A stretch of 64,000 nucleotides of DNA from Schmidtea nova (Eukaryota): assembly GCA_044892505.1 (NCBI GenBank), contig CM097882.1:471386001-471450000 (forward strand), written 5' to 3'. Shown here piece after piece: positions 6,355 to 57,701 of this stretch. Both the position numbers and the translations under genes were made by a program. A model generated the notes under the pieces. That model did no database searches and was not told where the DNA came from. It saw only the letters and a list, made by a program, of their open reading frames with translations. How positions within the stretch are numbered: position 1 is the first letter of the stretch; each line of letters begins with the position of its first letter.

Positions 6355-6429
6355 AGAATATATTTGGATTTGCGTTTGTTTTTAATTATTTCAGTGCCAT
6401 GTTTGTTGTGTTATGAATTTAATTTAAAT

Positions 6430-7720
6430 AACTATTAATTATTATTATCAATAATTCTCATAATGACTATAGATCAAAAATTTTTTTTTTATAAACAATA
6501 ACACAATATTTCGGCACAGCCTTTATCAAGTGTGTATTTCTATCGTTATATTTAGTTAATCCTAAATAGTAGCCATAATTATTTTTTTAATATTTTATAA
6601 TGATTTTACTGGATGAAAAAAATTATTTTAATTTTTTTGTGCGAATTGAATGTTGATGGACGGTTTGTATTTTTTTATGAAAAAAGTCTCGGAAGCTAAT
6701 CTTTGTAATGAATTTTTGAATCCTTCTTGTAGAATCTGGCATTTTGTTTCTTCTATAGATGGAGTTGTTTTATGTACTTTCTCCCAGTGTTCGTAATAAT
6801 TACTGGTTTTAATTTTAGTGTGTTCATTAAGTCGGGTGCGAAAAGTTCTATGTGTTTCTCCCATGTAAGTAGCGTCACATTTTTGGCAAGAAAGTTTATA
6901 TACTATATTTTTGGAAAAGCAAAAGCATCGGGTTGTGGAACGGCAAAGACATTTATGTTTGGAGATGTTGGAAATTGGTGGCTTTCGGAGTTGTGATTTT
7001 AACGGTGCGGAGGTTATGAACGTTGGACGGATGTGGATAGGCAAATCTGTTTGATTAAAAATGTTGGTGATTTTGTTGGCTGTAGTGTCATTTAGGAAAG
7101 GTAATCTTAGATATGTTGTGTGTTTGTTATTGTTATTGTGTTTCTGACGTTTTCTATTGTTGCGTTTATTGTGGTATGGTTCGTTAAGGAAGTGTTTCTT
7201 TACAAATTCTTCAGGGTATCCATTTTGAAAGAATCGTATTTTGAAGTTTTCTAATGTTTCTTGTATTTTGTTTGCGTCTGAACAGTTTCTTATGGCTCTT
7301 TTTCTTTCTCCTATTAGTAATGCGATTTTGCGTTGAAGTGGAACGTGGCTTTTCCATTATAGGATATGACCGCTATGTAAACTTTTAGAATATAGCTCGG
7401 TGTTTGCATTTAGTGTATCTTGGCCTTTTGTGAAACTTACTATGGTATCTAAAAATGGTATTTTACCTTCTGTGTTCGGCGTTTCAAAAGTGAATTGTAT
7501 GTTGGTGTTAGTAGAATTTGCGTGTGATAGGATTTGATTGAGAGGGATTGTGGAGACTATGAAGATGTCGTCGATGTATCGTTTCCAGAAAAGTATTTTG
7601 TCACCAAAAAAAGATATGATCTTAGATTCTATAAAGTTCCTGTAGAAGATGGCTGGCTAAGATGGGAGAAAGGTTATTACCCATGGCTAATCCATGAATT
7701 TGTTTGAATGGTTTTTCTTT
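6430..7720 (-). mobile_element. Penelope-like element family 1, copy A (5'-truncated; RT C-terminus + GIY-YIG endonuclease + 3' terminal repeat)
   Basis: RT motifs ..LSPILA.. and FWKRYIDDIF; GIY-YIG region (VYKLSCQKCDATYMGETHRTFRTRLNEH...ETFFIKKYKPSINIQ); frameshifts present. Confidence 0.92.
6501..6533 (-). ncRNA. Variant minimal hammerhead ribozyme in the Penelope terminal repeat
   Basis: Minus strand ACAC-TTGATAA-A-GGC TGT GCC-GAAA-TATT-GTGT: U3-A8 covariation, 3-bp stem II, palindromic ATAT stem III; same sense as the element ORF. Confidence 0.7.
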
Positions 7721-7723
7721 AAT

Positions 7724-7800
7724 TATGACTTTAATTATGACTTAATGACTTTAATGACTTTAATGACTTTAATGACTTTAATGACTTTAATGACTTTAAT
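7724..7800. repeat. 9-bp tandem repeat (AATGACTTT)n
   Basis: About six perfect units plus degenerate ones, directly at the 5' truncation of Penelope copy A. Confidence 0.9.
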
Positions 7801-15337: not shown

Positions 15338-15381
15338 CTATGAACATCAATTTATTTCACAAAACTATTTCTCTATATAAC

Positions 15382-30369: not shown

Positions 30370-30539
30370 NNNNNNNNNNNNNNNNNNNNNNNNNNNNNNN
30401 NNNNNNNNNNNNNNNNNNNNNNNNNNNNNNNNNNNNNNNNNNNNNNNNNNNNNNNNNNNNNNNNNNNNNNNNNNNNNNNNNNNNNNNNNNNNNNNNNNNN
30501 NNNNNNNNNNNNNNNNNNNNNNNNNNNNNNNNNNNNNNT

Positions 30540-34663: not shown

Positions 34664-35098
34664 GGAGGAATGTCGTTAGTTGCAACTTGTGAGATGTTTA
34701 AAACACTCTAAAGATTTTTATAAAATTATTTTAATAAAAAAAGTATTTTGCAAAGAAAACATCTCGTTTAAAATAAAAAGGATTATCAGCAAAGATTTTA
34801 ATAATTAGAATATTTAAAATTAAATTTAAAATGTACTATAAAAAAGTCTTATTAAAGTTTTTATTAAATATATAGGTTTATTAAAATATAGCTGAAATTA
34901 ATTAAAAATCGTATGTTGAATGTATGTATGAATGTTCTGTATGAAAATTCTGTCAAGAAAAATTACATATTTATTGGAATCTCCTAGCGTTGTTTTATTA
35001 ATTGTTGTAAAAAATACACTTGAAATTTTGTTAAATTAATTAATTATTTAATGATAGACACAATTAATACCCGAAGTTCGGGAAAAGAAGATACTAAC

Positions 35099-36138
35099 AT
35101 GGCGACCACGCTTTTGGCAAATTTTGTCGAACAACCGAAACATTTTGAAATGGGCCAAGATATCCACAAGTTCATAGCAGACATCGAACGTTTCTTCGAG
35201 ATATTAAATATCGAAGGCAGATTAAGAAATAACTTTGTGAGAGCATTTTTATCCGGAAAAGCCATCGAACTATATGATGAGATAACATCAGAAATGGGAT
35301 ATAAAGAAAAATATTAGGGCGTTTTCGAAACCATCAACGTTAATCGAAGATCTACAAGAAGCTCTGAATTATACGAAAGGTAAAGATAGAGTTAACGATT
35401 ATTGGAGGAAGCTGGAAAAGTTAACAGAAGGTATCCTCAAACATAAGATGGATAAAGATACGTTAATGAAGTTTCTACTGTTCCACACATTGGATGATAA
35501 GGAGATGAAATACGATCTCAAAATCCAAGACATAAAGCCTATCGGAGAAATAAAAGCGAGAATGGAGAAATTAGAAAAGATTAAAGACGAGTTAAACGAA
35601 ACCTACAGACCAATTGCAGTGATTTCAAGGAGAACATTTGCTGATACCGGTAAAATTCAGAATATGGAAAACAAAATGCCTGGTGCAAGAAGTAATTTTT
35701 CAAATCAAAACGTCATTCGACATGAAGCTAAACGCTGGGAGGGTAATAAACAAAGTTTTTACCCAAGGACAAGTGGTTTACGCCAAGGAAATCGAGTACA
35801 AGATAATCAATATAAAGGATATAACTACAACAGATATAGCAACGACCAGAAAAGAAAACAATATAAAGATGAGGAAGCTGGCCAACCGAGAAAATACCAG
35901 TGCTGGGCATGCAGAGAATGGGGCCATAGAAGGCACGAATGTCCAAATGTACAATGTACACAGTGCCATAAATAAGGACATTTCAAACATCAATGTTTTG
36001 CAATGAATAACTACAGATCCAGAGGACAGGTTGCCGGTATGGAAGAAGACTATGTGAATGACAACTACGAGGACCAGATACCGACCCCAAATGCCAAAGC
36101 TTTTGTGATGGAGGAGAGCACAAAAGCACAGGACTAAA
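35099..36138 (+). pseudogene. Gypsy gag with two CCHC zinc knuckles
   Basis: CWACREWGHRRHEC and CTQCHK*GHFKHQC; stops and frameshifts. Confidence 0.85.
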
Positions 36139-36399
36139 AGTATGTAATATTCTTGACAGAAACTGTATGTATGCGAATGATTGTGATTGTATGTTTGATT
36201 CTTGTGATTTTAATAGTAAATATTTAAATAATAATTTTTTTAATATAAATAATATTTGTGAATTAAATAGAAATAGTATATATGAATATAACTTTCAAAA
36301 TAGCGAATGTATAAGTTTAATAAATGAAATTAACAGCCACTATGATGCAAGTGGAAGTAGTAGTGAAGAAAGATTACTAACAATTGATTCAAGTATGTG

Positions 36400-39300
36400 T
36401 TTGATGAATGACAGGGATTCAATTATCAGATATGATGCTATGGGAGGCAGACCGAGCGTTGATGTTACTTTGAATGGTAGATGTTTAAGATGTTTGCTTG
36501 ACACAGGAGCAAAAATCAGCGTCATAGACCGCAATATGATTGAGAAATGTTATATAAATAATGTCAAAAAGAGTAATATGAAAGTAAAATGTACAAATGA
36601 CAGTCCCCTTAATATTGTTGGAACTATTATGATAAACATTAAAATTCAAGGAATAAAAGAAAGTAAAGATATACAATTTTATATAGCAGATGAAATTAGA
36701 CCTCAACTAATTGGTGGAATGAACTTTCTGGATGAATTTGGTATCCGGTTGAATATCGATGATTGTATAAATGATAGTCTGATTCGTACGACAAAGTTAT
36801 CGAAATTGTCAGTGAATTTCATAGAAGAAGGATTTATTGAAAGGAAAGTTGAAGATATGGTAATTAATAACCTAATAAACAAATACGAAAATGTTTTTAT
36901 GAAACACAAATGGGATGTGGGGAAAACTGACTTAATGAAACACGAAATAATTACTGCTAGCAAACCTACAGCACTCAATCCAAGAAGACAACCGGCTCAT
37001 CTACTGGATAAAATCGATGAACAAATAAAAGAAATGGAAAGGTTTGGCATTATCAAGGAATGTGAATCACCATGGAATACACCATTAGTATGTGTAAAGA
37101 AAAAAGGGAAAGATGATATTAGAATATGCTTAGACTTTAGAGTGCTAAATAACGTAGCAGATAAATAACGTAGCGCTAAATAACGTATTCCCAATGCCAA
37201 ACATGAATGAATTACTAGATGTTTTGAATGGATCAAAGTATTTTTCAACAATCGATCTGGGAAATGCATATTATCAAGTTGAACTAGAAGAAGAGTCTAA
37301 AATTAAAACGGCATTTTCAACTAAAAATAAGCAGTATTGTTTTAATAGAATGCCTTTTGGAATTGCAGCAGCACCAGGAACATTTCAGAAACTCATGAAT
37401 AGAGTACTAGGAGAATTGAATTGGATAGAAGCGGTAGTATACTTAGATGATATTCTGATTTTCTCAAAAACATTAGATGAGCATTATAGATCGATAGAAA
37501 AAGTATTTCTGAAGATTAAAAAAGCGGGATTAAAAATCAGCCCAGAAAAGTGCTATTTTAAAAGAAAAGAAATTAAATTTGTAGGGCATATAATAAATGA
37601 AGAAGGCATTCAAACGGATCCTAATAAAATAAAGGCAATAAAAGAATTTGATAGACCGAAATGCTTAAAAAAATTAAGAAGTTTCTTGGGACTAGCCAAT
37701 TATTACAGGAAATTCATTCACGATTATACCAAACATGCAAGAGTCTTAGAAGGTCTTTGTGGAAGCAATCAAAAGAAACTTATATGGACAGAAGATTGTG
37801 AAGAAAGTTTTAAAAATTTAAAAGATAATCTGAGTACAACGGCCGTACTGGCATATCCAGATTTCCAAAAGACATTTATATCGGATACATATGCAAGTTT
37901 TGATAGAATTGGAGCTGTCCTCTCCCAAAAGCAAGAAAATGGTAAAGAAAAAGTAGTAGCGTATGGTTCACATGCAATGAGTAAACATGAAATAGGATAT
38001 TGTATAACGAGGAAAGAATTGCTTGCCATTTATTATTTTACGAATCATTTTAAGCATTATTTATATGGTAAACGATTTACATTAAGAACAGATCACAAAG
38101 CAATAACGTTCATGGTGAAAACCAAGAAACCATTAACCCCACAATTTCAAACGTGGATAAATTATTTAAGCAGTCTGGATATCGATTTACAGTACAGAAA
38201 GGGCGATATTCACACAAATGCGGATGCCATGTCAAGAAGTGAATGTACAACATGTATACAATGCCAAATGATACATGGTGATCCAAAAATAGTGAAACTT
38301 AAGACGAGAATACTTTCGATGATGGTCGAAAACAGTGAAAACGTATGGCAAAAGCAGTCAATCGAGATAACAGATATACTAAATGGTAAGATAAGTAAAA
38401 TCGGGAATTTCAAATTTTGCACAGAAAAAGGAATTGTGAAAACTGATAATCATAAAATATGTGTAGTGGTCTAGAAAGCCGATACCCAAAATTCTCTCAA
38501 AGTATTAAAGAAACATAGCCTGCCTCAAACTTTCACTTTATTCAGTGATATTAGATTTTCAACAAGTCATTTTAATGACGAAAAAACTCCAAAAACAATC
38601 TGAGTTTAAAAAAAACAATCTGAGTTTAAAATAATATAAAATTTTAAACTGTGATAAAATTAAAACTTTTATTAAGATTTTTTCGAACAAAACATTTTTT
38701 TGTTTAAATTCTTTGAGTAAATATTTTGGATTCAAAAATATATCTTGTGAAATTTATTCAAGTTGTTAGATTTTTTGAAATAGAATTTTTTACATTTTCA
38801 AGGATTATGATGTTGAAAGCATTGATTATGATTCTTTTATGCTTCTTTACACTTATCTTGTATTATCAAATTTATCAGTGTTCTGCTACAGACAAACAAC
38901 TAATGCATGCCTATGTTTTATATCGACATGGAGATAGAGCACCTGTTATAATATATCCAACTGATAAGAATAGGGAAGACAAGTGGCCTAATGGGATTGG
39001 AGGATTAACAAACCGAGGAATTAGGCAGCATTTTAATTTGGGTATGTTGCTACGACGTCGTTACAAGGACTTCCCTGGGCAATATTTAAACTATTCATTA
39101 ATCTATGTGCGTAGCACTGATAGAGATGGAGCATTAATGTCTGCCGAATCAAATCTAGCAGGTTTATTCTATAACCTATCTAAAGGAATGATCAACAGCC
39201 TAAAGTGGCATCCTTTCCCAATTCAAACGCAATCAATACATATGTGTTTGTCCCCGCTAAAATATGGATACCAGAAAACAAAAGAGAAGAATTTATTTTG

Positions 39301-40209
39301 AATTTTCACAAAAGATTATGTCATGCGGGATATAATAAAGTAATTAAATACATAGAAAACAACTTTGCAATGAAAGATATGTCGAATATAATAAAAGAGG
39401 TAATTCAAAGCTGTGAAAATTGTCAAAGGAGAAAAGTTGTTACTGAGAGAACTAAGGAAGATATAAAAACCCCAGAGAAAGTTGAATTATTTGAGTCAAT
39501 CTTTATAGACTATTGTGGACCTTTCGGGAACAATATATACAACAAGAAATATATATTAGCAATAATTGATCAATATAGCAAATATGTTTCATTAAATGCC
39601 ACTAATTCTCAAGATGAAAAAAGAACAGCATCAATATTAAATCAATGGATATTAAAGTATGGAGCACCTAGAATAATCAATACAGACAGAGGCAAATCTT
39701 TTGAAAGTTCAATGATAAAAGAATTGTGTCAAAGATATAAATCAAGGATGAATCTTTCAAGTCCATATCATCATGCTGCAAATGGACAGATTGAACGTCA
39801 GTTCAGGACGATACGTGATGCACTTCACATAACTTTAAAAGATAAATTACATAAAAGTTGGGTAGAAGTACTCCCAGACGTGGAATTCATGTTAAATTCG
39901 ACGTATCAGAAAACGACTAGTAAAACACCGGCTGAGATGGTTTTCGGTAAAAAGATAATGTTAGAATGGAGCGATGTAGATCCAACAAAAAGATTTAAAG
40001 AAAACCATACAAATATCAGAAGGTTTAATATAGGAGATATAGTACTAATAAAAAAGGATATTCGAAATAAAGATGACGATAGATACGAAGGTCCGGGTGA
40101 AATTATTAATCAAAGACACGATAGAAGTTTTGAAGTAAAAATGCAAAATGGGAAGAACGTAATACGAAACATCGCATGGCTGAAGATTTTTAAAAAGAGG
40201 GGAATGTGA
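36400..40209 (+). pseudogene. Gypsy pol (protease-RT-RNase H-integrase), interrupted
   Basis: LLDTGAKIS; IDLGNAYYQ; VYLDDIL; DTYASFDRIGAVLSQ; H..LCH/CENC; FIDYCGPF; TDRGKSF; GQIER; RYEGP. A small duplication with a stop near 37160 and a 796-bp insertion at 38462-39257. Confidence 0.95.
38807..39229 (+). pseudogene. Histidine acid phosphatase (lysosomal/prostatic type) N-terminal fragment inserted in Gypsy pol
   Basis: Signal-peptide-like start, VLYRHGDRAP (RHGxRxP), WPNGIGGLTNRG..QHFNLG..LRRRY, YVRSTD..ALMSAESNLAGLF, WHPFPIQT. C-terminal HD half absent. Confidence 0.9.
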
Positions 40210-41899
40210 GATATTTAAAAACACTCTAAAGATTTTTATAAAATTATTTTAATAAAAAAAGTATTTTACCAAGAAAACATCTCGTTTAAAATAAAAATGA
40301 TTATCAGCAAAGATTTTAATAATTAGAATATTTAAAATTAAATTTAAAATGTACTATAAAAAAGTCTTATTAAAGTTTTTATTAAATATATAGGTTTATT
40401 AAAATATAGCTGAAATTAATTAAAAATCGTATGTTGAATGTATGTATGAATGTTCTGTATGAAAATTCTGTCAAGAAAAATTACATATTTATTGGAATCT
40501 CCTAGCGTTGTTTTATTAATTGTTGTAAAAAATACACTTTTGAAATTTTGTTAAATTAATTAATTATTTAATGATAGACACAATTAATACCCGAAGTTCG
40601 GGAAAAGAAGATACTAACACAACTCATCGATTAAAGATCTATGAATTAGAATCAACTCTAATGTGAAAACATCAGAGACCTAATAAATACCATAAAAAAC
40701 TAGCGTGGAAAATGACCGATGTCATAATTAGAATCAACTCGAGAATCAGCAGAAAAAAATGTTTATGGTGTTTAAATCTCAGGCGAAACATCGAAAAGAA
40801 AAATAAACTGAACTAGTCATACAATTATTAAAATGAAAATTATTGATTTAAATAAAAATATATAAGAAACCAAAATATAATTATGATAACATGTTTTACG
40901 TTGGTCCAGCAGACTCGCATTTTCGAGGAATTTGATTGAGACTTGAAAAACCTTCCGACAGCAAAAATGTTGATCTCAACGGCAAATCATAATAATATTA
41001 CATATAAATGTAAATTAAATTAGAAATTATCTTTAATTTTAAATCCTATTAATATAAAAGCTAATGAATAGTTGAAAATGAAACGTTCTTGCATATATTT
41101 TTAAAAACTAAAAATAGAACGTATCGCAAAACTCCACATTTTACAAGATTTTGATTTATATATTTTTAAAGAAATTTTTTAAATTTACTAAGGTAAAATA
41201 ATTTGATATATACATACTACTTGTTTTAGTAAGTAATACCAAATGCAGTTTGATTTATCTTTCTAGACTATGATAAATCCACTTCATTCAAAAAGTTTCA
41301 TTTTTATAATTACTTGAAAAAAGATGAGATGAAAATTCGGTTGCTTTAAAAATAAATTTTGATCTATAGTCTTTATATAAACAATAAAAAGGTAAATCAT
41401 GTCTGGGTTTATTAAAATAATTAAAAATCTAATTTATAATTACTGTAGTGCCTCCGTCATATATATATTTATTTATATTATAACTTATTTAATATATTAT
41501 ATTTACAAAACTAAATTAAAAAAGGGAGATTTATAAAAAAGTTTGTTTAAAAGAAGAAAAAGAGATATCTGATTTGAAATTAAAACGCAAGCAATTACAA
41601 TAAATTTGAAATCCAAAACTCAAGAAATTTATAATTGATTTGAAATCCTAAACGCAAGAAATTTATAATAGATTTAAAATCAAAAACGCAAGAAATTTAT
41701 AAACGCAAAAAAATTGGAAAACTCAGAAAAGAAGATATTTTTTAAATAAATGTGTATTGAATATTTCTTCTTGTTTAATTTTGTTTTAGAGGTATCTGCA
41801 ATGAAAGTTGCAACCCCTACAATTACTATTAATAAAATGTATTAATGATTTTATTGTCAAATTTCAACATGAAAAAAATATTATTTTTATAATTATTTT

Positions 41900-43082
41900 T
41901 AATATATAATCAATGATTCCCATAATGAATCACTATAGATCAAAATTTCTTTAAATAAGTACACAATATTTAAGCACAGCCTTTATCAGGTGTGTATTTC
42001 AATCGTTATATTAACTTAATCCTAAATACTAACTTTAATTATTTATTTTATATCTTATAAAGATTTTATTGGATGAAAAAAATGTATTTTAATTTTCTTT
42101 TTAAACATCATTTTTTTGTGCGAATTTAATGTTGATGGACTGTTTGTATTTTTTGATGTAAAAAGTCTAGGAAGCTAATCTTTGTAATGAATTTTTGAAT
42201 CCCTCTTGTATAATCTGGCATTTTGTTTCTTCTATAGATGGAGTTGTTTTATGTACTCTTTCCCAGTGTTCGTAATAATTACTGGTTTTGGTTTTAGTGT
42301 GTTCATTAAGTTGGGTGCGAAAAGTTCTATGTGTTTATCCTATGTAAGTAGCGTCACATTTTTGACAAGAAAGTTTATAAACTATTTTTTTGGAAAAGCA
42401 AAAGCATTGGGTTGTGGAAAGGCAAAGACATTTATGTTTGGAGATGTTGGAAATTAGTGGCTTTCGGAGTTGTGATTTTAACGGTGTGGAGGTTATGAAA
42501 GTAGAACGAATGTGGATAGGCAAATCTGTTTGATTAAAAATGTTGGTGATTTTATTGGCTGCAGTGTCATTTAAGAAAGGTAATCTCAGATATGTTGTGT
42601 GTTTGCTATTGTTATTGTGTTTCAGGCGTTTCTTATTGTGTTTATTGTGGTATGGTTCGTTAAAGAAGTGTTTCTTTACAAATTCTTCAGGGTATCTATT
42701 TTGGAGGAATCGTGTTTTGAAGTTTTCTAATGTTTTTTGTATTTTGTTTGCGTCTGAACAGTTTCTTATGGCTCTTTTTCTTTCTACTATTAGTAATGTG
42801 ATTTTGCGTTGAAGTAGAACGTGGCTTTTCAATGGGAGGATATGACCACTATGTAAACTTTTAGATTATAAATCGGTGTTTGCATATAGTGTATCTGGGT
42901 CTTTTGTGAAACTTACCATGGTATCTAAAAATGGTATTTTACCTTCTGTGTTCGGTGTTTCAAAAGTGAATTGTATGTTGGTGTTAGTTGAATTTGCATG
43001 TGATAGGATTTGATTGAAAGGGATTGTGGAGACTATGAAGATGTCGTTGATGTATCGTTTCCAGAAAAGTATTTTGTCTTCA
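41900..43082 (-). mobile_element. Penelope-like element family 1, copy B (5'-truncated)
   Basis: Colinear with 6430-7610; YIND instead of YIDD; stops; degenerate hammerhead motif at 41961-41993 (-). Confidence 0.92.
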
Positions 43083-43149
43083 TAAAAACTACTACAAAAC
43101 TTCAAACGCCTTTTTCGAGTCGATTAACCAGCTCGATTGAGTTTTTAGT

Positions 43150-44590
43150 GAAACAATAGATCGACAGAATTTTATTGTTTATAAAATGGCTTGATCAAAA
43201 AATTAGTTTGTTTTTGTGTTTGTAATACACGCGTGTTTTGTAATTAATTTTGCATTTTTCATCAATATAAAATAACTTTATTGAGTTTTCGTTGTAATTA
43301 CATGTATATAAAATTTAATTGTCTACAAAATAGCTTGATTCAAAATTCTGTATGTCATTAAGCTTGTCATGCACACATGTTTTGTAATTAAATTTGTATA
43401 TTTCACATAAATAAAGTAACGCTATTGAGTTTTCATTGCAATAAAGTATAGAAAAAATTTAATTTTCTATAAAATGGCTTGATTAGAAATCTGAAAGTTG
43501 CCGTATTTTGTAATGTACACGTGTTTTATTTTTAATTTACAAATTTTCAACAATAAAAAGTAACTTTATGTATTTTTCATTGTAAAAAGTATAAATTTAA
43601 TTTAATTTCTTATAAAATGGCTTGATTAGAAAATTAATTTGTTGGTTTGTTTGTAATGCACACGTGTTTTGTAATTAATTTTGAATTTCTCATCTATATA
43701 TTAAGTTTTCGTTGTAATTACATGTAGATAAAATTTAATTGTCTACAAAATAGTTTGATTCATTGTAATATTGTGTGTATATAATTTATATGTCTACAAA
43801 ATAATTTAATTGGAAATTTAGTGTTATGGTGAGTTTTTAATACATGCATGTTTTGTACTTAAATACATCCGTGTTGCATTACGGTTTTGTAAAAAAACTT
43901 TTATTTTTCACCTATTTAAACAATTTTATTGAGTTTTCATTGTAATAAAGTATAAATAAAATATAAATTGTTATAAAATAACTTGATTAAAAATTTGTCG
44001 AATTTTGTGATATGCGTGTTTTGTATTAAAATTTGTAATTTTTCCCATATATACAGTAACTTTATTGAATTTTTATTGTAATATTGTAAGTGTAAAGTTT
44101 AAATTTCTATAAAATGACTTAATTAGAAATTTGAAAGTTGTCGTCTTTTGTGTTGCACATGTGTTTTGTGGATAAGGTTGTAAGTTTCAACTATTTCAAA
44201 TTATTTTATTGAGTTTTTATTTTAATAAATTGTGTGAAAAATTAATTTTTTACAAAATGGCTTGATTGAAAAATTTGTTAGTCGAATTTTGTGATGCACA
44301 TGTGTTTTTTTTATTAATTTTTACATTTTTCATCTAAATGAAGTAATTCTATTGAGTTTTCATTGTAATAAAGTATAGATAAATTTTAATTTTCTATAAA
44401 ATGGCTTGATTCATAATTTAAAAGTTATTATTCTTTGTGTTAAATATATAATTATTAATTAAATTTTACATTTCCCACACATATACAGTAACTTTATTTA
44501 ATTTTTATTGTAATATTGTAAGTTTAAACTTTAATTTTCTATAAAACGGTTTGAAGGTTGTCGTACTTTGTGTTGCACATTTGTTTGAAT
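43150..44590. repeat. ~144-bp degenerate satellite, about 10 units
   Basis: AAATGGCTTGAT-type motif at 43184, 43328, 43472, 43615, 44112, 44255, 44399 and 44544. Confidence 0.88.
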
Positions 44591-45253
44591 TCTTATAAAA
44601 TCTTTGAATAAATTAAGGTGATTTGGAATACTTTTTATATGAATACTGGATACATTTCTGAATGAATTCTTTGAAAAGGAATATTTTGAGTTCAGAATAT
44701 ATTATTTTTAACTACTTTGTTAAAAGGTTCTGGTCATTTTATACGTTTTTAATAAAATTATTAGATATTGACTTATTTTTAACAGTTTATTAAAGAATAT
44801 TAAGTGGAAATATATTTTTTAATTAAAATTTACTATTTGATTACGTTTTGTTAAAAGTTCTTGAGTGTAGAATATATTTGTAATTAAAATTTACCGCTAG
44901 ACTAAATTTTATTGTTGTGAAATATAATTTGAATAAATATTTTGAGTGTTGGTTTAATTTTATAAAACAAATAAGTCATCCGACAAATGTTTTTTTCAAA
45001 AGATATTTCAAGAAATTGAAATAATGAAGCTAAGGCAGTCGGGTGCGCTTGCAAACAGTTTCTGTTGAACACTTTTAGTGCGCAGAGGTGAAAATGAAAT
45101 TCATACGCTATGTTTGCAAGTTACAGATTATCTGTAGGACCTTGCATATTCAAGTGATGTTTTATCCAGTGTACCAGGTATAGTATATAACAAAAATCTT
45201 TCGACTTTGTTTTATACTTACCTGGCGCGGAGAGAAATTTTCGCGTCTCCTGC

Positions 45254-45295
45254 ATAGCACTGATGAGAGCCAAAAGCTCGAAACTAGTCTGCTAT
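45254..45295 (+). ncRNA. Minimal type I hammerhead ribozyme, copy 1
   Basis: ATAGCA-CTGATGA-GAGC CAAAA GCTC-GAAA-CTAG-TC-TGCTAT: 6-bp stem I, intact core, 4-bp stem II, palindromic ACUAGU stem III, GUC cleavage triplet (predicted cut 45289/45290). Confidence 0.95.
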
Positions 45296-45636
45296 TGGGG
45301 ATTTGCACTGGGTATCACAAAAAAAATCACAAGCTTTTTTTTGTTTAAAACAAATAAGTCATCCGACCAATTTTTTTTTCAAAAGATATTTCAAGAAATT
45401 GAAATAATGAAGCTAAGGCAGTCGGGTGCGCTTGCAAACAGTTTCTGTTGAACACTTTTAGTGCGCAGAGGTGAAAATGAAATTCATACGCCATGTTTGC
45501 AAGTTACAGATTATCTGTAGGACTTTGCATATTCAAGTGATGTTTTATCCAGTGTACCAGGTATAGTATATAACAAAAATCTTTCGACTTTGTTTTATAC
45601 TTACCTGGCGCGGAGAGAAATTTTCGCGTCTCCTGC

Positions 45637-45678
45637 ATAGCACTGATGAGAGCCAAAAGCTCGAAACTAGTCTACTAT
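45637..45678 (+). ncRNA. Minimal type I hammerhead ribozyme, copy 2
   Basis: Identical core; the 3' strand of stem I reads TACTAT (G>A mismatch); predicted cut 45672/45673. Confidence 0.9.
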
Positions 45679-47183
45679 TGGGGATTTGCACTGGGTATCA
45701 CAAAAAAAATNNNNNNNNNNNNNNNNNNNNNNNNNNNNNNNNNNNNNNNNNNNNNNNNNNNNNNNNNNNNNNNNNNNNNNNNNNNNNNNNNNNNNNNNNN
45801 NNNNNNNNNNNNNNNNNNNNNNNNNNNNNNNNNNNNNNNNNNNNNNNNNNNTTTAATATTTATCGTATTTGACCTTGTAATTTATTTTGTTTTTGTGCGT
45901 AGTCGTCTAATTATGTTATATTTTTATAATAATTTGAGTATTGTTTTCATTGAACGGTCATCATTGAAGTTGTTCAAAAATAATAATAACAATAATAAAT
46001 TATACTAACAAAAATAAATTAATAATAATTTATATATTTTATACAATAAAATGTAAATTGAAGATATTTCAAAAATAAAAGTTTTCAAAATTTTCATAAA
46101 TTTCAAAAATTTTTTATTTTAAATATTGCAAATTGATTTTAATTTATCACTTGGTCAAATTTTTTTTAATCAAGATTTTACAAAATTTCACTTATTAATT
46201 CCATAATTAATGGAAATTTTAATAATTCATTGAATATAACTACTAATTTGCAAAATAAAGAAATTCGTGGCATAGTAATGCTCAAAATTTTTTTAAATTG
46301 CAGAAAATTAATTATGAAAATTGTTCATCAAATTTCATTTCCGGATTTAAAGTTGTTTTTAATTTATTGTACGAAAGAAAGCAAAGAACTTCGCAAATGT
46401 CACTTCATGGACAAATCTGTATTGGCTGTCAATGTAAAATGTTATATATATGTGTGTGTGTAGATTATTCATTAAAGAATAATTCTGATTTTTGGGCATA
46501 CTTTTATTGATACAGCCCGGCCAAAAATAACCATAAACCACACACTATTTATAATTATTAATATTTATTTAAAAATCTATGCTTTAACAAAAAAAATACA
46601 TATTTCGAATACTTTTTCAACAAGTTCAAGAGTCACTATTCACAACAGAATGATAATCACCAATTTTCTATCACTTCTCTTTATTCTTAAAATATTCAAG
46701 TTTATTAGTGTGCGTAAGAGTGTTTGAGCACATACGACTTATCTTATTTTCCAGTGCCTTAATTGTTTTTACTTGGCTGTGCGGGTATATAAATAGAATT
46801 TACAAAATAGAGGTAATAAAAACAAAAATAAAAATAAAAAAATTACAGTTAGACACAAATTTAAGTTGATAATAATTAATTGTTTAAATGGGAAACAAAT
46901 TTTAGTGACTTCATAATTCAAATATTAAAATTGTTGTTTATAAAGGATTCTTAGATTACGTGAATGTAAAATTGTAATCTAATTTATCATTAATAAAATA
47001 ATATTAATTTATTTCGATTGATGAAACAAAAATTAAAGTTTGGAAATTAGAAATTGTCCGTCAAATTACTGTATCCTTTTTTTGAATTTATATAAAATTA
47101 GATATGGATGGCGGTTGACCAACAGACAATGGCATTATGAAAATAATTAAATAGAAACAGTATTTAATTTTCAGATAAAAATT

Positions 47184-48964
47184 GATTTAACGATCTATAT
47201 AAGCAACTTCTCTATAAGCAACATTCTTTATAAGCAACCTCTATATAAGCAACCTTTTTATGTTCAATCGCTCTGTATAAGCAACTTATTTTTTTGAATA
47301 TGGATTGTTGACTTAAGTTTAGACTTTTTAGGTATAAACTCCTCTGACCACGGCTAATAAATTTAAAATCGTAAAAAATTTGTTATTTTAATATGTTTCT
47401 CTTTTATGCTGCCGGTATTGAAGAATAGTTATATAAAATCTGTTAACTCATTAATTAATAAATTAATATTTTAATATATTTGTATTTTAAATTTAGCCAA
47501 AAAATGAATCAGAAGGAAAAAAGACGTTCTATTTCCCTAAAGGATAAACTGTCAATTTTAAAGGAAATTGAAAATGGTAAAAGAACAAGGGAAATTTGTA
47601 TTGAATATAAAGTTGCTAAGTCTACAATAAACAGACTAAAGGAAAATAAAGAAATTCTAGAAGAATATGCATCCAAAACCTATGTAAATCAAGATAAGAT
47701 AAAGCGAATGAAGACAATAAAGTATAGTGAAATCGACAATGCAGTGTTTTCTTGGTTCTTGGAGCGGCTACAGCTTAACGATTTGGTTCCAAATGAAATT
47801 ATAAAATTAAAGGCACTTGAAGTAAAAGATTGAGTAATGGTCCCAAAACATTTGTAGCAAGTGATGGATGGTTAACAAAATTTAAAAAACGTCATGGTTT
47901 ACGGATCTTATCCGTTTCTGGGGAGAGTACGTCTTGCAACTGGTTTAATGAGATATTTATACCTTCAGTAACTCGACACTTAAAATCTAAAAATCTTCCA
48001 GTTAAGGCTCTACTCTTAGTAAATAATGCAATCTGCCATGGGTCCGAGGATAACTTCACTGGCGACCCAAATTTTAAAGTTAGGTTTCCCCCCCTAATAA
48101 TACGCCATTATTGCAATCATATAATTTAAAAGATGTTGTTTATTTAGTTGTGCAAGCCTGGGATGAAATTCCTGTGTCAGTTATACAAAATTCATTTAAA
48201 CATCTTTTCCTGTCAGGTGATGAAATTCAAAACAACATCCATTCTGACCACTTTTCCGAAGAAGACGATATTCACCTACCAAGATTGTATAATTCGATAT
48301 TTAATGATTGTAACTTGGCTGATAATGAAATTATGGATTGGGCAAGTGGAACAAGCGAGGCATATCATTTATTTGACCTTGAAGAAAATATAGGGCTAGA
48401 AAATGAAATTTATTTGACCTTGAAGAAAATATAGGGCTAGAAAATGAAATTTATTTGACCTTGAAGAAAATATAGGGCTAGAAAATGAAATTTCTCCTGC
48501 CGAAGAAGGCGAAAAAAACTCGGAAGACACTAATAAATACACTGATGATGTTATAAATTCTTTTAATTTGGTGGTAGAATGGGCAAAAGAAAATGATTTA
48601 CCTTGTAACGAGATTCTATTGCTGCAAAGAATGAGAGAAAAGGCTATTATTAAAAAATATATGTAATTATTTGTGTTTGTTTAGGCAATTAGTACCGTAT
48701 TTAACTAAATATTTATTAAAATTTGATTCTTTAATTTTTCAAAACAGAATTAATAACTAGGTTTATAAAATAAAATATTGTTTTCATTTGTATAAGAAAC
48801 TAAAAATATTTTTTCTACACAGTTGAAGTATACAAATAAATAACTAAAAATATTTTCTAGGCGGTATATATTTTTATACTCCTTTTTTCCCTATAAGCAA
48901 CTTTTCTATATAAGAATATTTTTTTAATTGGTTCTTATGAGTTGCTTATATAGAGCGTTCACTG
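47184..48964 (+). mobile_element. Tigger/pogo DNA transposon, internally deleted
   Basis: TIR (CAGTG)AACG(C/A)TCTATATAAGCAAC. CENP-B-type HTHs (RRSISLKDKLSIL; IDNAVFSWF; ASDGWLTKFKKRHG); DDE_1 (WFNEIF; LLLVNNAICH). A 3 x 41-bp tandem duplication lies at 48367-48490. Confidence 0.9.
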
Positions 48965-51390
48965 TATTATAATAAAATTAAATAATAAAATTATAAATTA
49001 GCATAATAAATTAAATATAAGTAATGAAGTTATTAATTGGCTTGACTATAAATTAAATTTTTAAGAATGATTGAAAATTAAAAATATAAAATATTTATTG
49101 ATTGCTTGTATATGGATATTCTCTATTCCAGAGGTGTCAACTAATTTTCCTATAAGATCTACTTCGCGCAGTAAAAATCCCCTGCGATCTTCTGTTTCTA
49201 AAAGTAAGAGTAAGAGTAGAAGGCAATATTTAACGAACTAAATTTCACGAATTTTAAAATTTCTAACATATACTTATTTAAATTATATTAAATAAAAATA
49301 AAAATCATATCGATAATATTTTTAATAGTTATAATTAAAAACATTCACAAACTTTACATATTTAAAAAAAAATATAATTTTACTTTTATTGATTATGATA
49401 ATGTCATCTGTTAAGAAGGAAACTGAAAGATACAAAAATATAATTATATTATTTTTACATCTAAAGTAACTTACGTAAGAATAGGCAAAAACTCATTTTG
49501 AACTTCCTGATGCTACAATATTTGAATTACTTATTCTACATTGCATCGTGTCTATAATTTGTACATAATTTGGTGAATAATTACTCAGACCATTTCTCAA
49601 GCAGGATTCTAAATATTCGCCTGTTAAATTAGTTCAGTATTTCGACTTTATTATTTTCATATGTGAAAATGCTGATTCGCAAAAAAATGTCGAATCAAAA
49701 CAGGCGTATAAATTTTCAGCACATCTTTTAGATCCAGATATTTATCTTCTTCTAAATGTTAGAAGATGGGCGTACAATAAGGGTTTTAAAATTAAAATAT
49801 TATACATTAGGAAATGGAAGGGACAGAATAAATATACATGTGGATCAGATGGCAATGACAATTCAATAATCAATGGAAAATATCAACTTCAATGACATTA
49901 TGATTTTAGTGATTCTATATGATGATATTTTACTGTTGATCTTATTTGACTTTTGTTTTATGATGATAATTATCTATTGTATATTCATGAAAATTATGTG
50001 ATTAAGCTGTCACTATCTGACAATTTTTATTTTATGGGATAATTTTATTTTGTAAAATATTGTTGACAATTAATTTTTGTAATGAAAATTTATCAGCATG
50101 ACAATTTATAATTTGACAATTTATCATTTGTGATCTTGCAAACTTTTATTGACATTTTTTATGGTGATGGACAAAATTTGATATAATTTTGAAAGAATAT
50201 TTTGTTTTGAAAATATTTATGTAAATTAAGTTTTTGAAAATGGATTATATTTGCATTTATATTTTAATATTTTAATTCAATAAATTATAATAATAATAAT
50301 AAAAGAAATAAATAATACAGATTGTTTAAATAAATTTAAAATAAATAAATTTAAAATAAATAAATTACTGTTTGTTTAATTAAATTATATTTATGACCTA
50401 CAAAGGTCAGAAAAATGAAATAATATCCCAAGGTTAAAAAATAATTTTTGAAAACAATTCTGTTTTGAAAACAACTTTATTTTCAAAACAATTTTAATCA
50501 ACTCAAGAAGCAAAATAACAATCATTATTGACAAATTAAGTGCCTTAAAATTTAGTATATAAACTCACTGATTTTTCAGTCAAATCACCCATAAAATCTT
50601 TGCGTAAGAAGAATTTCATAGTTGTTATCGACTATTGAAATAATAATTTCGAGCATACAAGATATCGAGCTCAGAAGGCATTCACACACACACACAAACA
50701 CATATATATATATATAGTAAGCCAAATCACAAATAAATACGATTGATTTTTTATTAAAACGTATCTTAAACTATAATAATTATTTCAACAACTTACAAAT
50801 TGTTTTTTTTTGGATCAAGAAAAACAGATATCAAGAAACTCCTTGACAATTTCCTATATTATTATTATTTCAACAGTAACAGATTTAAAGAAAATCCCTG
50901 ACAATTTCTTTCATTATTTTTATTATTTCAACAATTTGGATAAAGAGTAACAGATTTTAAGAAAATACCTGGCAATTTCCTTCATTACTATTATTGTTTC
51001 AACAATAACTGATTTAAAGAAAATCCCTGACAATTTCCTTCATTACTATTATTGTTTCAACAATAACTGATTTAAAGAAAATCCCTAACAATTTCCTTCA
51101 TTATTATTATTATTTCAACAATTTACAAATTGTTACTTTTGAATAAAGATTAACAGATTTAAAGAAACCCCTGACAATTTCCTTACACCGAAGATTAACC
51201 AAATCTATTACGTTCTAACAATCTACTTCAAACTACTATTCCTATCAATATTAAAAGACTGTCTGCCTATCGTAAAAGTAACTTTTGTGATTTTAGTTAT
51301 ATAATTTTCAGTAAATAAAATTGTTCAAAATAGAAAAAAAAATAATATTAATTGAGAAAACCCGAACAACTAACAAACTATTTTGAACAA

Positions 51391-55203: not shown

Positions 55204-55252
55204 ATCTCAAAAAAAACTAATAATTGAGAAAAACCGAACAACTAACAAACTA

Positions 55253-56153
55253 ATTAATAAATAAGTAACAAAATAAGCCTTTGCTGCAAAAATAATAATT
55301 TTATTAAGTGAGAAAATTTTCGATTATCAAATAATCCTCGTCAATCTCTAATTTGACAAATAACTATTATCTTCATTCATTCTGTTGTTTCTTTTTTTTC
55401 GTGATTTCTCTTCCTTTTCGTTGGATGTTAATCTGATTAATAAATTTTTTAAATTCTTAATTGTTTTTTTAAATGTTTATTTTGTTAAAAATTTAAAAAT
55501 ATAAAATAAAAACTCCAACATTTTTTAAAAATTTTTCCTAAATTTCTTTTCGAATAAATAGATTTATCCTTTTCTTTAAATTTAAAATTTTTATTGCCTG
55601 CATTCTACATTTTTAATTTTCTAACCCTTAATATTTGATTTTATTTTTTTATAATTTTACAATTTAATTATATTATATCTCTTTGAAAAGCCCATAAATT
55701 CTCTGTACTATCACTTTTCTTTCTCCATTTTTTTCTATCTTCCTTTTACTTTTCTACCTTCTTATTTGTAGAACCACATGTTTTTTAACAAGATAGTAAG
55801 TGGGCGATTTCGCTAATTTCCTCTTTAGAGTTAATTTTATATTTTTATATTTAGAGTATTTTATATTTTTAAATTTTTAACAAAATAAATATTTAAAAAA
55901 AACAATTAAGAATTTAAAAAATTTATTAATCAGATTAACATCCAATGAAAAGGAAGAGAAATCACGAAAAAAGAAACAACAGAATGAATGAAGATACCAG
56001 TTATTTGCCAAATTAGAGATTGACGAGGATTATTTGATAATCGAAAATTTTCTCACTTAATAAAATTATTATTTTTGCAGCAAAGGCTTATTTTGTTACT
56101 TATTTATTAATTAATTTAGTACTTAATGCTGCTACCAAGGAATCACCATTTTA
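55253..56153. mobile_element. Penelope family 2 terminal repeats in inverted (fold-back) arrangement
   Basis: 55253-55840 matches 30570-31150; ~55850-56145 is an inverted partial copy; 13-bp TSD AACTAACAAACTA. Confidence 0.88.
56016..56054 (+). ncRNA. Candidate variant hammerhead in Penelope family 2 terminal repeat
   Basis: GAGA-TTGACGA-G-GATTAT TTG ATAATC-GAAA-ATTT-TCTC; identical on the minus strand at 30623-30661 and 55310-55348. Confidence 0.6.
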
Positions 56154-57257: not shown

Positions 57258-57701
57258 TACTGAAAATTATATAACTAAAATCACAAAAGTTACTTTTACG
57301 ATAGGTAGACAGTCTCTTAATATTGATAGGAATAGTAGTTTGAAGTAGATTGTTAGAACGTAATAGATTTGATTAATCTTCGGTGTAAGGAAATTGTCAG
57401 GGATTTTCTTTAAATCTGTTACTCTTTATCCAAATTGTTGAAATAATAAGAATAATGAAAGAAATTGTCAGGGATTTTCTTTAAATCTGTTACTGTTGAA
57501 ATAATAATAATATAGGAAATAGTCAGGGAAATTCTTGATATCTGTTTTCTTGATCCAAAAGAAACAATTTGTAAGTTGTTGAAATAATTATTATAGTTTA
57601 AGATACGTTTTAATAAAAAATCAATCGTATTTATTTGTGATTTGGCTTACTATAGCATTTGCTATAGTAAGCCAAATTCAAATTTTAAATTGGCGAAAAT
57701 A

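What the first reader, a model, noticed from the sequence alone, without database searches (positions are those of the whole stretch)
44963..45710. Tandem 383-bp hammerhead-ribozyme array (retrozyme-like; predicted source of a small circular RNA)
Seen: two near-identical 383-bp non-coding units, each with a complete type I hammerhead (CUGAUGA / GAAA / GUC) whose stem III is reduced to a palindrome (ACUAGU). Established: minimal type I hammerheads with palindromic stem III cleave as dimers, and tandem monomers of a few hundred nt are the signature of metazoan non-LTR retrozymes, which yield circular RNAs and are thought to use Penelope RT. Inference: a read-through transcript would be cut at 45289 and 45672 to release a 383-nt monomer. 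Penelope elements lie 2 kb away.
Basis: partly seen in the sequence, partly recalled or inferred. Interest (0 to 1): 0.9.

Follow-up and report, generated by a model that had tools for sequence, protein, structure and literature searches.

The report
Tandem hammerhead-ribozyme repeat (animal retrozyme)
Two head-to-tail copies of a 383-bp non-coding repeat each carry a complete self-cutting hammerhead RNA motif, which matches a known class of animal repeat (non-LTR retrozymes) that yields small circular RNAs, so it is a clean but ordinary example.

Summary
A 383-bp tandem repeat lies at 44963-45710 (2.0 copies, 98% identical) and runs straight into an N stretch (45711-45851), so its true copy number is unknown. 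Each unit carries a type I hammerhead on the + strand, at 45254-45295 and 45637-45678. Each has all core nucleotides, a 6-bp helix I, a 4-bp helix II, and a helix III reduced to the palindrome ACUAGU. Predicted cuts after C45289 and C45672 would release a 383-nt RNA. That RNA folds far better than shuffles (z -6 to -7) and brings its two ends together in helix I.

Rfam's type I model matches full-length but scores below its curated cut-off (27.6 and 23.1 bits against 34). A model I built from 46 independent hammerheads of the same subtype scores them 48.4 and 41.2 bits, with nothing else in the window above 12.2.

A Penelope-like element does lie 1.9 kb away. It is a dead, 5'-truncated fragment on the opposite strand and shares no sequence with the repeat.

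Everything testable fits the published metazoan non-LTR retrozyme class. Transcription, cleavage, circularisation and mobility are inferred, not shown. Verdict: a new member of a known kind, of modest interest.

The parts
44963..45710 (+). Visible part of the tandem array of the 383-bp unit (1.95 units). The right end is cut by the N stretch.
   Evidence: TRF: period 383, 2.0 copies, 98%. Alignment A1. blastn of the monomer finds no other copy in the window.
44963..45289 (+). First unit, 5'-truncated. It corresponds to positions 57-383 of the cleavage-defined monomer. The left edge is ambiguous by about 10 nt (44953-44963) in A/T-rich sequence.
   Evidence: blastn: 98.8% over 327 nt to monomer positions 57-383. 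The repeat finder family D7 starts at 44953.
45254..45295 (+). Hammerhead 1, type I. Helix I has 6 bp (45254-45259 with 45290-45295). Core CUGAUGA is at 45260-45266. Helix II has 4 bp with a 5-nt loop (45267-45279). GAAA is at 45280-45283 and the helix III palindrome ACUAGU at 45283-45288. The predicted cut is after C45289.
   Evidence: Rfam RF00163 27.6 bits, full-length. My own structural scan. Model R1 48.4 bits, E 2e-14.
45290..45672 (+). The one complete ribozyme-to-ribozyme monomer (383 nt), the predicted linear and circular RNA. GC is 36.6%, and it holds no ORF with a family match.
   Evidence: Linear MFE -117.7 kcal/mol, z -6.1. Circular MFE -112.8, z -7.4, 70% of bases paired. GC. Pfam finds nothing for the 86-aa open stretch.
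45637..45678 (+). Hammerhead 2. Its core and helices II and III are identical to hammerhead 1. Helix I has one C.A mismatch, caused by the A at 45674. The predicted cut is after C45672.
   Evidence: Rfam RF00163 23.1 bits. Model R1 41.2 bits, E 8e-12, mismatch marked.
45673..45710 (+). Start of a third unit (38 nt), ending at the N stretch.
   Evidence: blastn: 100% over 36 nt to monomer positions 3-38. Sequence read directly.
45711..45851 (.). N stretch (141 N) that hides the right end of the array. I left it as it stands. No unit sequence resumes after it.
45317..45344 (+). A8/U8 hairpin with an 8-nt A/C-rich loop, 28 nt downstream of the cut site. The left edge of the array maps into the equivalent of its 3' arm.
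   Evidence: Predicted folds. Base runs. Array edge.
45597..45609 (+). 13-mer whose first 11 nt equal the 5' end of U1 snRNA. It is also present at 45214-45226 in unit 1. In the predicted fold it pairs with a 5'-splice-site-like arm of a hairpin.
   Evidence: Exact matches at only these two sites, against 0.04 expected. The U1 11-mer is printed in PMC4856993. No Rfam U1 match.
41877..43088 (-). Penelope-like element fragment B: the C-terminal part of the RT-endonuclease ORF plus the 3' terminal region. It is 5'-truncated, and its coding remnant carries 3 in-frame stops. It is a neighbour, not part of the repeat.
   Evidence: 89.6% identical to fragment A over 1221 bp. tblastn with 800-880 aa RT + GIY-YIG relatives.
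6416..7729 (-). Penelope-like element fragment A: the same family as B, 5'-truncated, with 1 in-frame stop and 1 frameshift. It carries a GIY-YIG endonuclease domain.
   Evidence: Pfam GIY-YIG 26.4 bits against a cut-off of 22.6. phmmer finds 1549 relatives. Relatives have RVT_1 followed by GIY-YIG. Bounds and break counts.

Best explanation
This is a short genomic array of a metazoan non-LTR retrozyme, a non-coding 383-bp unit with one type I hammerhead per unit.

Shown by the sequence: the units are in tandem. Each hammerhead has the full catalytic core. Helix III is too short (2 bp closing a 2-nt loop, or 1 bp plus a CUAG tetraloop) to form within a single motif. It is a 6-nt palindrome, so two motifs can pair with each other. 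The 383-nt product is predicted to be highly self-paired, with its 5' and 3' ends held together by helix I.

Inferred from the family's published behaviour:
1. The + strand is transcribed through at least two units. The promoter is unknown. RNA polymerase III is unlikely, because each unit has U8 and U9 runs.
2. Two hammerheads on one multimeric transcript pair through ACUAGU into a double hammerhead. They cut after C45289 and C45672, leaving a 5'-OH and a 2',3'-cyclic phosphate.
3. A host RtcB-type tRNA ligase joins the ends into a 383-nt circle. The circle rebuilds an intact hammerhead, because the mismatch in copy 2 lies outside the excised monomer.
4. Circles serve as templates for reverse transcriptases supplied in trans by Penelope-like elements, which gives new tandem DNA copies.
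For: - Tandem structure and identity.
- Complete type I hammerhead, matched full-length by Rfam RF00163. It scores 48.4 and 41.2 bits with model R1, which was built from 46 independent hammerheads of the same subtype. The next best site in the 64-kb window scores 12.2 bits.
- In those independent examples helix II pairs in 95.6% of cells with compensatory changes. Observed covariation is 1.01 against 0.21 in shuffles.
- Monomer fold: z -6.1 linear and -7.4 circular. Helices I and II form in the MFE structure, and no distant segment sequesters the ribozyme.
- No hammerhead on the minus strand.
- Unit GC is 36.6% and there is no coding signal.
- Penelope-like elements are present in the same genome.
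- The class definition, the 150-450 bp unit size (mussel 350-390 bp), dimer-dependent cleavage and RtcB circularisation are published in PMC7229834 and PMC4209133. The link between Penelope-like elements and retrozymes is published in 10.64898/2026.07.22.740005.
- Environmental eukaryotic contigs hold the same hammerhead subtype as pairs 491-727 bp apart without any reverse-transcriptase hit.
Against: - Only one locus and about two copies are visible.
- No other copy of the unit exists in the window, and no relative beyond the ribozyme core was found in the metagenome or viral contig collections or in the literature text. Dispersal in the genome is therefore untested.
- The right junction lies in the N stretch, so target-site duplications cannot be checked.
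- Rfam's curated threshold is not reached.
- The second hammerhead has a helix I mismatch.
- The unit shares no sequence with the Penelope-like fragments in the window, and the nearby fragment is dead and on the opposite strand.
- There is no expression evidence of any kind.
Confidence: 0.7

Rival explanations
1. The two units are terminal repeats (pLTRs) of a Penelope-like element of another family, arranged in partial tandem. Its ORF is either lost or hidden in the N stretch. The hammerhead would then be the element's own pLTR ribozyme, not that of a separate non-autonomous element.
For: The same hammerhead subtype (core plus a CUAG helix III) sits next to Penelope-like RT coding sequence on 33 of 95 environmental loci. 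Pairs of motifs about 3.0-4.2 kb apart flank the ORF. Penelope-like elements form tandem and partial-tandem copies (PMC11167929). Retrozyme units and pLTRs are phylogenetically intermingled in Xenopus. The array runs into an N stretch.
Against: The spacing between ribozymes here is 383 bp, not about 3 kb. No RT or GIY-YIG coding signal lies on the + strand on either side. In all 36 motifs on environmental contigs with a Penelope-like RT hit, the ORF is on the same strand as the hammerhead, whereas fragment B is on the opposite strand and unrelated in sequence. A 6-bp helix I with a 4-bp helix II is the canonical retrozyme form rather than the minimal PLE form described in PMC4209133. In the environmental set, a 6-bp helix I is found in 20 of 70 motifs on contigs without a PLE hit but only 4 of 36 on PLE contigs.
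Confidence: 0.15
2. This is a local tandem duplication, or a small satellite, that happens to contain one relic hammerhead-bearing dispersed repeat (SINE-like, as in Schistosoma). It is no longer transcribed or processed. The tandem arrangement arose by DNA-level duplication rather than by reverse transcription of a circle.
For: Only two copies are visible at a single locus. A 144-bp satellite lies immediately upstream, at 43092-44564, which shows that the region is prone to tandem amplification. Copy 2 already carries a helix I mismatch. There is no evidence of expression.
Against: The core is intact in both copies, and the copies are 98% identical, so the duplication is recent. The monomer's predicted fold is far more stable than shuffles (z -6 to -7), which is not expected of decaying sequence. 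The excised monomer would rebuild a fully paired hammerhead. U8 and U9 runs within the unit argue against a polymerase III SINE-type transcript.
Confidence: 0.12
3. The match is a chance resemblance and there is no real hammerhead.
For: Rfam scores are below the gathering threshold. In the whole-window search the best hammerhead-clan hit has E 0.14.
Against: All invariant core positions are present, together with paired helices I and II. The pattern gives 0 matches in 100 shuffles. Model R1 gives 48.4 and 41.2 bits against a background maximum of 12.2. The motif lies in phase in both units.
Confidence: 0.02

Closest known systems
Metazoan non-LTR retrozymes (Cervera and de la Pena 2020, PMC7229834), for example the 350-390 bp units of Mytilus galloprovincialis and the 330/350 bp units of the axolotl
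   Same: Non-coding tandem units of a few hundred bp, with GC below 50% and one type I hammerhead per unit. Helix I has 6 bp and helix II has 4 bp. The monomer is predicted to be highly self-paired, with the ribozyme not sequestered. Penelope-like elements co-occur in the genome.
   Different: No sequence similarity could be shown to any described unit. No described sequences were available to the tools, and a text search for the ribozyme found nothing. Only about 2 copies are visible. Expression and circles are untested. The unit contains an exact copy of the U1 snRNA 5' end, which the papers I read do not mention for retrozymes.
Newt/salamander satellite 2 hammerhead and axolotl HHR_Amex1
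   Same: A very weak helix III (1 bp capped by a palindromic tetraloop) is expected to make a single motif a poor cleaver and a pair of motifs an efficient one.
   Different: Those are vertebrate repeats. This window is an AT-rich (about 27% GC) invertebrate-like genome. The best named match of its one host exon is a mite protein at 63% identity. The rest of the unit is unrelated as far as could be tested.
Minimal hammerheads in the terminal repeats of Penelope-like elements (Cervera and de la Pena 2014, PMC4209133)
   Same: Type I topology, a palindromic or absent helix III, a dimeric mode of action, and tandem arrangement of the carrier.
   Different: PLE motifs flank an RT-endonuclease ORF about 3 kb apart on the same strand. 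The paper describes them with a shorter helix I (4-5 bp) and a longer helix II. Here the spacing is 383 bp with no ORF, and the motif has the canonical 6/4-bp helices.
Plant LTR retrozymes (PMC4918200)
   Same: Non-autonomous elements that yield hammerhead-processed circular RNAs.
   Different: Plant elements carry type III hammerheads inside LTRs, have PBS and PPT sites, give 600-1000 nt circles, and are mobilised by Gypsy machinery. None of these features is present here.

Membership tests
Hammerhead ribozyme, type I | Invariant core: CUGANGA, GAAA, the A15.1-U16.1 pair, and a cleavage triplet ending in H (here GUC) | tested here: met
   Read directly from the sequence. Pattern search. Rfam alignment. 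Model R1 alignment.
Hammerhead ribozyme, type I | Helix I open-ended, helices II and III closed (type I topology), with paired helices I and II | tested here: met
   Helix I is 6/6 bp in copy 1 and 5/6 in copy 2. Helix II is 4 bp with a G10.1-C11.1 pair.
Hammerhead ribozyme, type I | A stable helix III within one motif | tested here: not met
   At most 2 bp enclose a 2-nt loop. The segment is the palindrome ACUAGU, whose self-duplex of 6 bp has an energy of -4.8 kcal/mol. This is the known dimer-dependent variant, so it does not exclude membership.
Hammerhead ribozyme, type I | Score at or above the curated gathering threshold of Rfam RF00163 (34 bits) | tested here: not met
   27.6 and 23.1 bits. 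The shortfall goes with the deleted helix III positions and the diverged stems.
Hammerhead ribozyme, type I | Self-cleavage activity | not testable with these tools
   No RNA or biochemical data were available.
Metazoan non-LTR retrozyme | Tandem repeats of about 150-450 bp, each with one type I hammerhead | tested here: met
   Period 383 bp with two hammerheads in phase. The copy number is cut short by the N stretch.
Metazoan non-LTR retrozyme | Non-coding, with no LTRs, and GC below 50% | tested here: met
   The longest open stretch is 86 aa with no Pfam match. GC is 36.6%. PBS and PPT motifs were not searched for specifically.
Metazoan non-LTR retrozyme | Monomer RNA predicted to be highly self-paired, with its ends brought together | tested here: met
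   z -6.1 linear and -7.4 circular, 70% of bases paired, and helix I joins the 5' and 3' ends.
Metazoan non-LTR retrozyme | Target-site duplications flanking the array | tested here: inconclusive
   The right junction lies inside the N stretch, and the left edge is ambiguous by about 10 nt.
Metazoan non-LTR retrozyme | Many dispersed copies in the genome (a mobile element) | not testable with these tools
There is no second copy in the window and no relative in the metagenome or viral contigs.
Metazoan non-LTR retrozyme | Expressed as unit-length linear and circular RNA | not testable with these tools
   No transcript data were available.
Metazoan non-LTR retrozyme | Co-occurrence with Penelope-like elements in the same genome | tested here: met
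   Two 5'-truncated PLE fragments lie in the window.
Penelope-like element terminal repeat (pLTR) hammerhead | Motif lies in repeats flanking a same-strand RT plus GIY-YIG ORF | tested here: not met
   There is no + strand RT or endonuclease signal near the array. The only nearby PLE remnant is on the minus strand and unrelated in sequence. Caveat: 141 N follow the array.

The most novel reading that the evidence does not exclude
Each unit carries, 36 nt upstream of helix I of the hammerhead and on the same strand, an exact copy of the first 11 nt of U1 snRNA (45214-45224 and 45597-45607). Two readings are not excluded. The retrozyme family may have arisen by capturing the 5' end, and perhaps the upstream promoter, of a U1 snRNA gene, which would give it its own polymerase II snRNA-type transcription start. 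Alternatively, its abundant circular RNA may present a U1-like, 5'-splice-site-binding sequence and so interfere with or report on splicing. The match could equally be a by-product of a hairpin in which one arm merely resembles a 5' splice site.
Probability: 0.05. Interest if true: 0.6.

Novelty: new member of a known kind. Interest (0 to 1): 0.3.

Why it matters
The finding adds one more well-preserved locus to a class already known from cnidarians, molluscs, flatworms, annelids, arthropods and lower vertebrates, and it changes no concept. Its practical value is as an annotation. The repeat should be labelled a retrozyme-type hammerhead array rather than anonymous satellite. It predicts a specific 383-nt circular RNA that can be looked for in this organism's transcriptome. 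It also flags that an assembly break coincides with a ribozyme-bearing tandem array. If the U1-like segment proved to be conserved across the family, that would be a new and testable link between retrozyme RNAs and snRNA genes or splicing.

Tried and rejected
- **Rfam at gathering thresholds over the whole window:** no match. At E-value thresholds only the two hammerheads are credible. The Lnt, SNORD37, CrcZ, mir-1277 and snoRNA hits are low-complexity chance matches.
- **Exact 30-nt ribozyme sequence:** none in viral contigs or metagenome contigs. The ribozyme string was not found in 8.4 million papers.
- **blastn of the monomer against 95 hammerhead-bearing loci and against the window:** only the ribozyme core matches.
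- **Hammerhead in the window's Penelope-like fragments:** I found one candidate minimal motif with the U3-A8 core variant at about 6497-6529 (-) in fragment A. Its core is not kept in the three other copies of that terminal segment, and model R1 does not score it. I treat it as inconclusive.
- **Identifying the organism:** Relatives of the Gypsy RT are unnamed metagenome proteins at 69% identity or less. Cluster look-up gave only UniParc numbers. The single host exon (NIPA) has its best named match in Sarcoptes scabiei at 63% identity, which is too distant to place the genome.
- **Bacterial-type promoter and terminator scan:** irrelevant for a eukaryote and not used.
Full report
**1. What is there**

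Positions 44963-45710 hold a head-to-tail repeat with a period of 383 bp. TRF reports 2.0 copies, 98% matches and no indels. A pairwise alignment shows five substitutions over the 365 shared positions. The array ends at a run of 141 N (45711-45851), which I left untouched. No unit sequence resumes after the N run. The visible array therefore has three pieces:
- a first unit that lacks its first 56 nt (44963-45289);
- one complete unit (45290-45672);
- the first 38 nt of a third unit.

The real copy number and the right junction are unknown.

**2. The ribozyme**

Each unit holds a motif on the + strand with the following parts:
- a 6-nt helix I strand;
- the core CUGAUGA;
- a 4-bp helix II with a 5-nt loop;
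- GAAA;
- the segment CUAG;
- UC, followed by the complementary helix I strand.

This pattern occurs exactly twice in the window and never in 100 dinucleotide shuffles. My own structural scans of both strands, including the U3-A8 core variant and motifs without a helix III, find no other convincing hammerhead.

Rfam's type I model (RF00163) aligns over its full length. It scores 27.6 bits for copy 1 and 23.1 bits for copy 2, with local E-values of 2e-4 and 6.5e-3. Both are below the curated threshold of 34 bits, and nothing passes gathering thresholds in the whole window.

To get a fairer yardstick I collected hammerheads of the same subtype (core plus a CUAG helix III) from public metagenome and viral contigs, which gave 95 loci. 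In these loci the unconstrained helix II positions pair in 95.6% of cells with many compensatory changes. The covariation score is 1.01, against 0.21 in shuffles and 0.20 or less when partners are slid. They are therefore real structured RNAs.

A covariance model built from 46 of them scores the two window motifs at 48.4 and 41.2 bits, and the next best site in 64 kb at 12.2 bits. This test is partly circular for the invariant letters, which were taken from the window's motif. It is not circular for the helices.

Copy 2 has a C.A mismatch at the second pair of helix I, caused by the A at 45674. That position lies outside the excised monomer, so a circle made from 45290-45672 would rebuild a fully paired hammerhead.

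**3. Helix III and the dimer argument**

Between GAAA and the cleavage-site C there are only the letters CUAGU. A single motif can form at most A-U and C-G pairs around a 2-nt loop, or equivalently one pair plus a palindromic tetraloop. The six letters ACUAGU are self-complementary, and their self-duplex of 6 bp has a computed energy of -4.8 kcal/mol.

This is the architecture described for canonical metazoan type I hammerheads: a 6-bp helix I, a 4-bp helix II, and a 1-2 bp helix III capped by a small palindromic loop. Those motifs cleave poorly alone and well as a double hammerhead formed by two copies (PMC4209133). Axolotl monomer and dimer constructs show the same contrast (PMC7229834). That this particular motif behaves the same way is an inference.

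**4. The RNA product**

Cuts after C45289 and C45672 would release a 383-nt RNA.
- Its linear minimum free energy is -117.7 kcal/mol, against -83.2 ± 5.7 for shuffles (z -6.1).
- As a circle it is -112.8 kcal/mol, against -77.3 ± 4.8 (z -7.4), with 70% of bases paired.
- The complementary strand folds less well, at -92.5 kcal/mol, and carries no ribozyme.

In the predicted fold helix I joins the two ends and helix II forms. No distant segment masks the ribozyme, which PMC7229834 reports as typical of most metazoan retrozyme circles. The unit has 36.6% GC and no coding signal. U8 and U9 runs inside each unit make read-through by RNA polymerase III unlikely. The promoter is unknown.

**5. Surroundings**

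The window is AT-rich (about 27% GC) and full of animal-type mobile elements:
- A Ty3/Gypsy element with 99% identical LTRs lies at 34697-40619.
- A second Gypsy-like pol region lies at about 51.4-54.9 kb on the minus strand.
- There are Pao/BEL, pogo/Tc5 and IS1595-like transposase fragments.
- A 144-bp satellite lies at 43092-44564, directly upstream of the array.

Two copies of one repeat lie on the minus strand, A at 6416-7612 and B at 41877-43088, and they are 89.6% identical. Fragment A has a GIY-YIG domain. Its 242-aa open stretch finds 1549 relatives, aligned to the C-terminal 230 residues or so of 800-880 aa proteins. Those proteins carry RVT_1 followed by a C-terminal GIY-YIG domain, which is the Penelope-like architecture.

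Both fragments are 5'-truncated and cover roughly the last 40% of the ORF. Fragment A has one in-frame stop and one frameshift, and B has three in-frame stops. No intact Penelope-like ORF is in the window. Fragment B ends 1.9 kb from the array, lies on the opposite strand, is separated from it by the satellite, and shares no sequence with the unit.

In the environmental set, all 36 motifs on contigs with a Penelope-like RT hit lie on the same strand as the ORF. B is therefore a neighbour and not part of the same element.

**6. What it is**

The published definition of metazoan non-LTR retrozymes has these features:
- tandem 150-450 bp non-coding units with one type I hammerhead each;
- low GC;
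- no LTR, PBS or PPT;
- self-paired unit-length linear and circular RNAs;
- co-existence with Penelope-like elements (PMC7229834).

Every one of these features that sequence can test is met. PBS and PPT motifs were not searched for specifically. Dispersal, target-site duplications and expression could not be tested.

The main rival is that the units are tandem terminal repeats of a Penelope-like element of another family. It cannot be fully excluded, for three reasons. The same hammerhead subtype occurs in both settings in the environmental loci: 33 loci have an RT hit, with motif pairs 3.0-4.2 kb apart, and 6 loci have pairs 491-727 bp apart with no RT hit. Recent work finds retrozyme units nested among pLTRs in Xenopus (10.64898/2026.07.22.740005). 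The array also runs into an N stretch. Against this rival are the 383-bp spacing, the absence of any same-strand ORF, and the canonical 6/4-bp helices.

I put the retrozyme reading at 0.7, the pLTR reading at 0.15, an inert local duplication or relic at about 0.12, and chance at 0.02 or less.

**7. Mechanism, with its status**

Shown:
- the tandem DNA;
- an intact core in both copies;
- the palindromic helix III;
- the stable fold, with the ends juxtaposed.

Inferred from the family:
- multimeric + strand transcription;
- cleavage by a double hammerhead;
- circularisation by an RtcB-type ligase rather than by the ribozyme;
- use of the circle as a template by a Penelope-like reverse transcriptase to give tandem cDNA.

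One loose observation bears on the last step. A Penelope-like protein studied in vitro nicks AT-rich DNA and starts reverse transcription inside an AC-rich stem-loop of its RNA (PMC11167929). The unit here has an A8/U8 hairpin with an A/C-rich loop at 45317-45344, and the left edge of the array falls in the equivalent of its 3' arm. A start site for reverse transcription would mark the 3' end of an insert, not its 5' end, and the 3' end is hidden. This is a note and not evidence.

**8. Seen in passing: a U1-like segment**

Each unit contains a 13-mer at 45214-45226 and 45597-45609. It is exact at only these two sites, against 0.04 expected. Its first 11 letters equal the 5' end of U1 snRNA as printed in PMC4856993. 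Rfam finds no wider U1 similarity, and the 11-mer is absent from the 95 other hammerhead loci. In the predicted fold it pairs with a segment that resembles a 5' splice site. It may be a coincidence of that hairpin. This is the basis of the 'novel case', to which I give 5%.

**9. Limits and declarations**

- No eukaryotic genome collection was available, so a genome-wide copy count was impossible and the organism remains unidentified. The single host exon found (NIPA magnesium transporter, 15024-15356, minus strand) has its best named match in a mite at 63% identity.
- I searched that exon alone and left out the step of joining exons.
- Slip: in my reasoning I wrote a U1 snRNA sequence and three short consensus motifs from memory. 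The one U1 statement kept rests on the window's own letters.

**10. Verdict**

The feature is a clean new member of a known kind, and I score its interest at 0.3.

Noticed in passing
window 45214-45226 and 45597-45609 (+): An exact 13-mer in each unit whose first 11 nt equal the 5' end of U1 snRNA (PMC4856993). Its complement is a perfect 5'-splice-site-like sequence. In the predicted fold it pairs with a splice-site-like arm of a hairpin. It is absent from 95 other hammerhead loci.
   Followed up: partly
window 45317-45344 (+), and the array's left edge at 44953-44963: An A8/U8 hairpin with an A/C-rich loop lies 28 nt after the cut site. The left boundary of the array maps into its 3' arm. 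This recalls the AC-rich stem-loop where a Penelope-like RT starts in vitro, but here it marks the wrong end of the insert.
   Followed up: partly
window about 6497-6529 (-), inside the 3' terminal region of Penelope-like fragment A: A candidate minimal hammerhead with the U3-A8 core variant. The core is not kept in the three other copies of this terminal segment (41900-42110, 9590-9760, and inverted at 9840-10060), and model R1 does not score it.
   Followed up: partly
window 9611-9725 (direct) and 9745-10059 (inverted): Extra copies of the roughly 300-bp 3' terminal segment of the Penelope-like element, one direct and one inverted, lie about 3.1 kb from fragment A's own terminus. This layout looks like direct plus inverted pLTRs around a decayed body.
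   Followed up: partly
window 34697-40619 (+): A young Ty3/Gypsy LTR retrotransposon with LTRs of about 400 bp that are 96-99% identical. Its protease, RT-RNase H and integrase domains are read in several separate open stretches, so pol is broken more than once.
   Followed up: partly
window 38726-39301 (+), inside that Gypsy element: An open stretch between the RNase H and integrase regions matches the histidine phosphatase superfamily, branch 2 (Pfam PF00328, E 4e-14). This is an unusual passenger for a Gypsy element and may be a captured host fragment.
   Followed up: no
window 43092-44564: A 144-bp satellite of about 10 diverged copies (around 70% identity) fills the space between Penelope-like fragment B and the hammerhead array.
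   Followed up: no
window 50713-51313 and 57258-57654 (inverted, 95-99%): Long inverted repeats, themselves built of units about 58 bp long, bracket a 6-kb segment. That segment holds the second Gypsy-like pol region (about 51.4-54.9 kb, minus strand). An IS1595-like DDE fragment lies just beyond the right repeat, at 57871-58200.
   Followed up: no
window 30539-31054 versus 55240-56141: A repeat of about 500 bp is present in direct (87-99%) and inverted (94-99%) orientation 25 kb apart. The first copy sits between two N stretches (30370-30538 and 31655-32036).
   Followed up: no
window 15024-15356 (-): The only clear host-gene exon found is a NIPA-type magnesium transporter (Pfam PF05653, E 4e-40). 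Its best named relative is a Sarcoptes scabiei protein at 63% identity, which is not enough to name the organism.
   Followed up: partly
window 22583-23517 (+), 12466-13335 (-), 47462-48431 (+): Further dead mobile-element pieces: Pao/BEL peptidase plus DUF5641, and two pogo/Tc5-type transposase remnants (CENP-B/HTH and DDE_1 domains).
   Followed up: no
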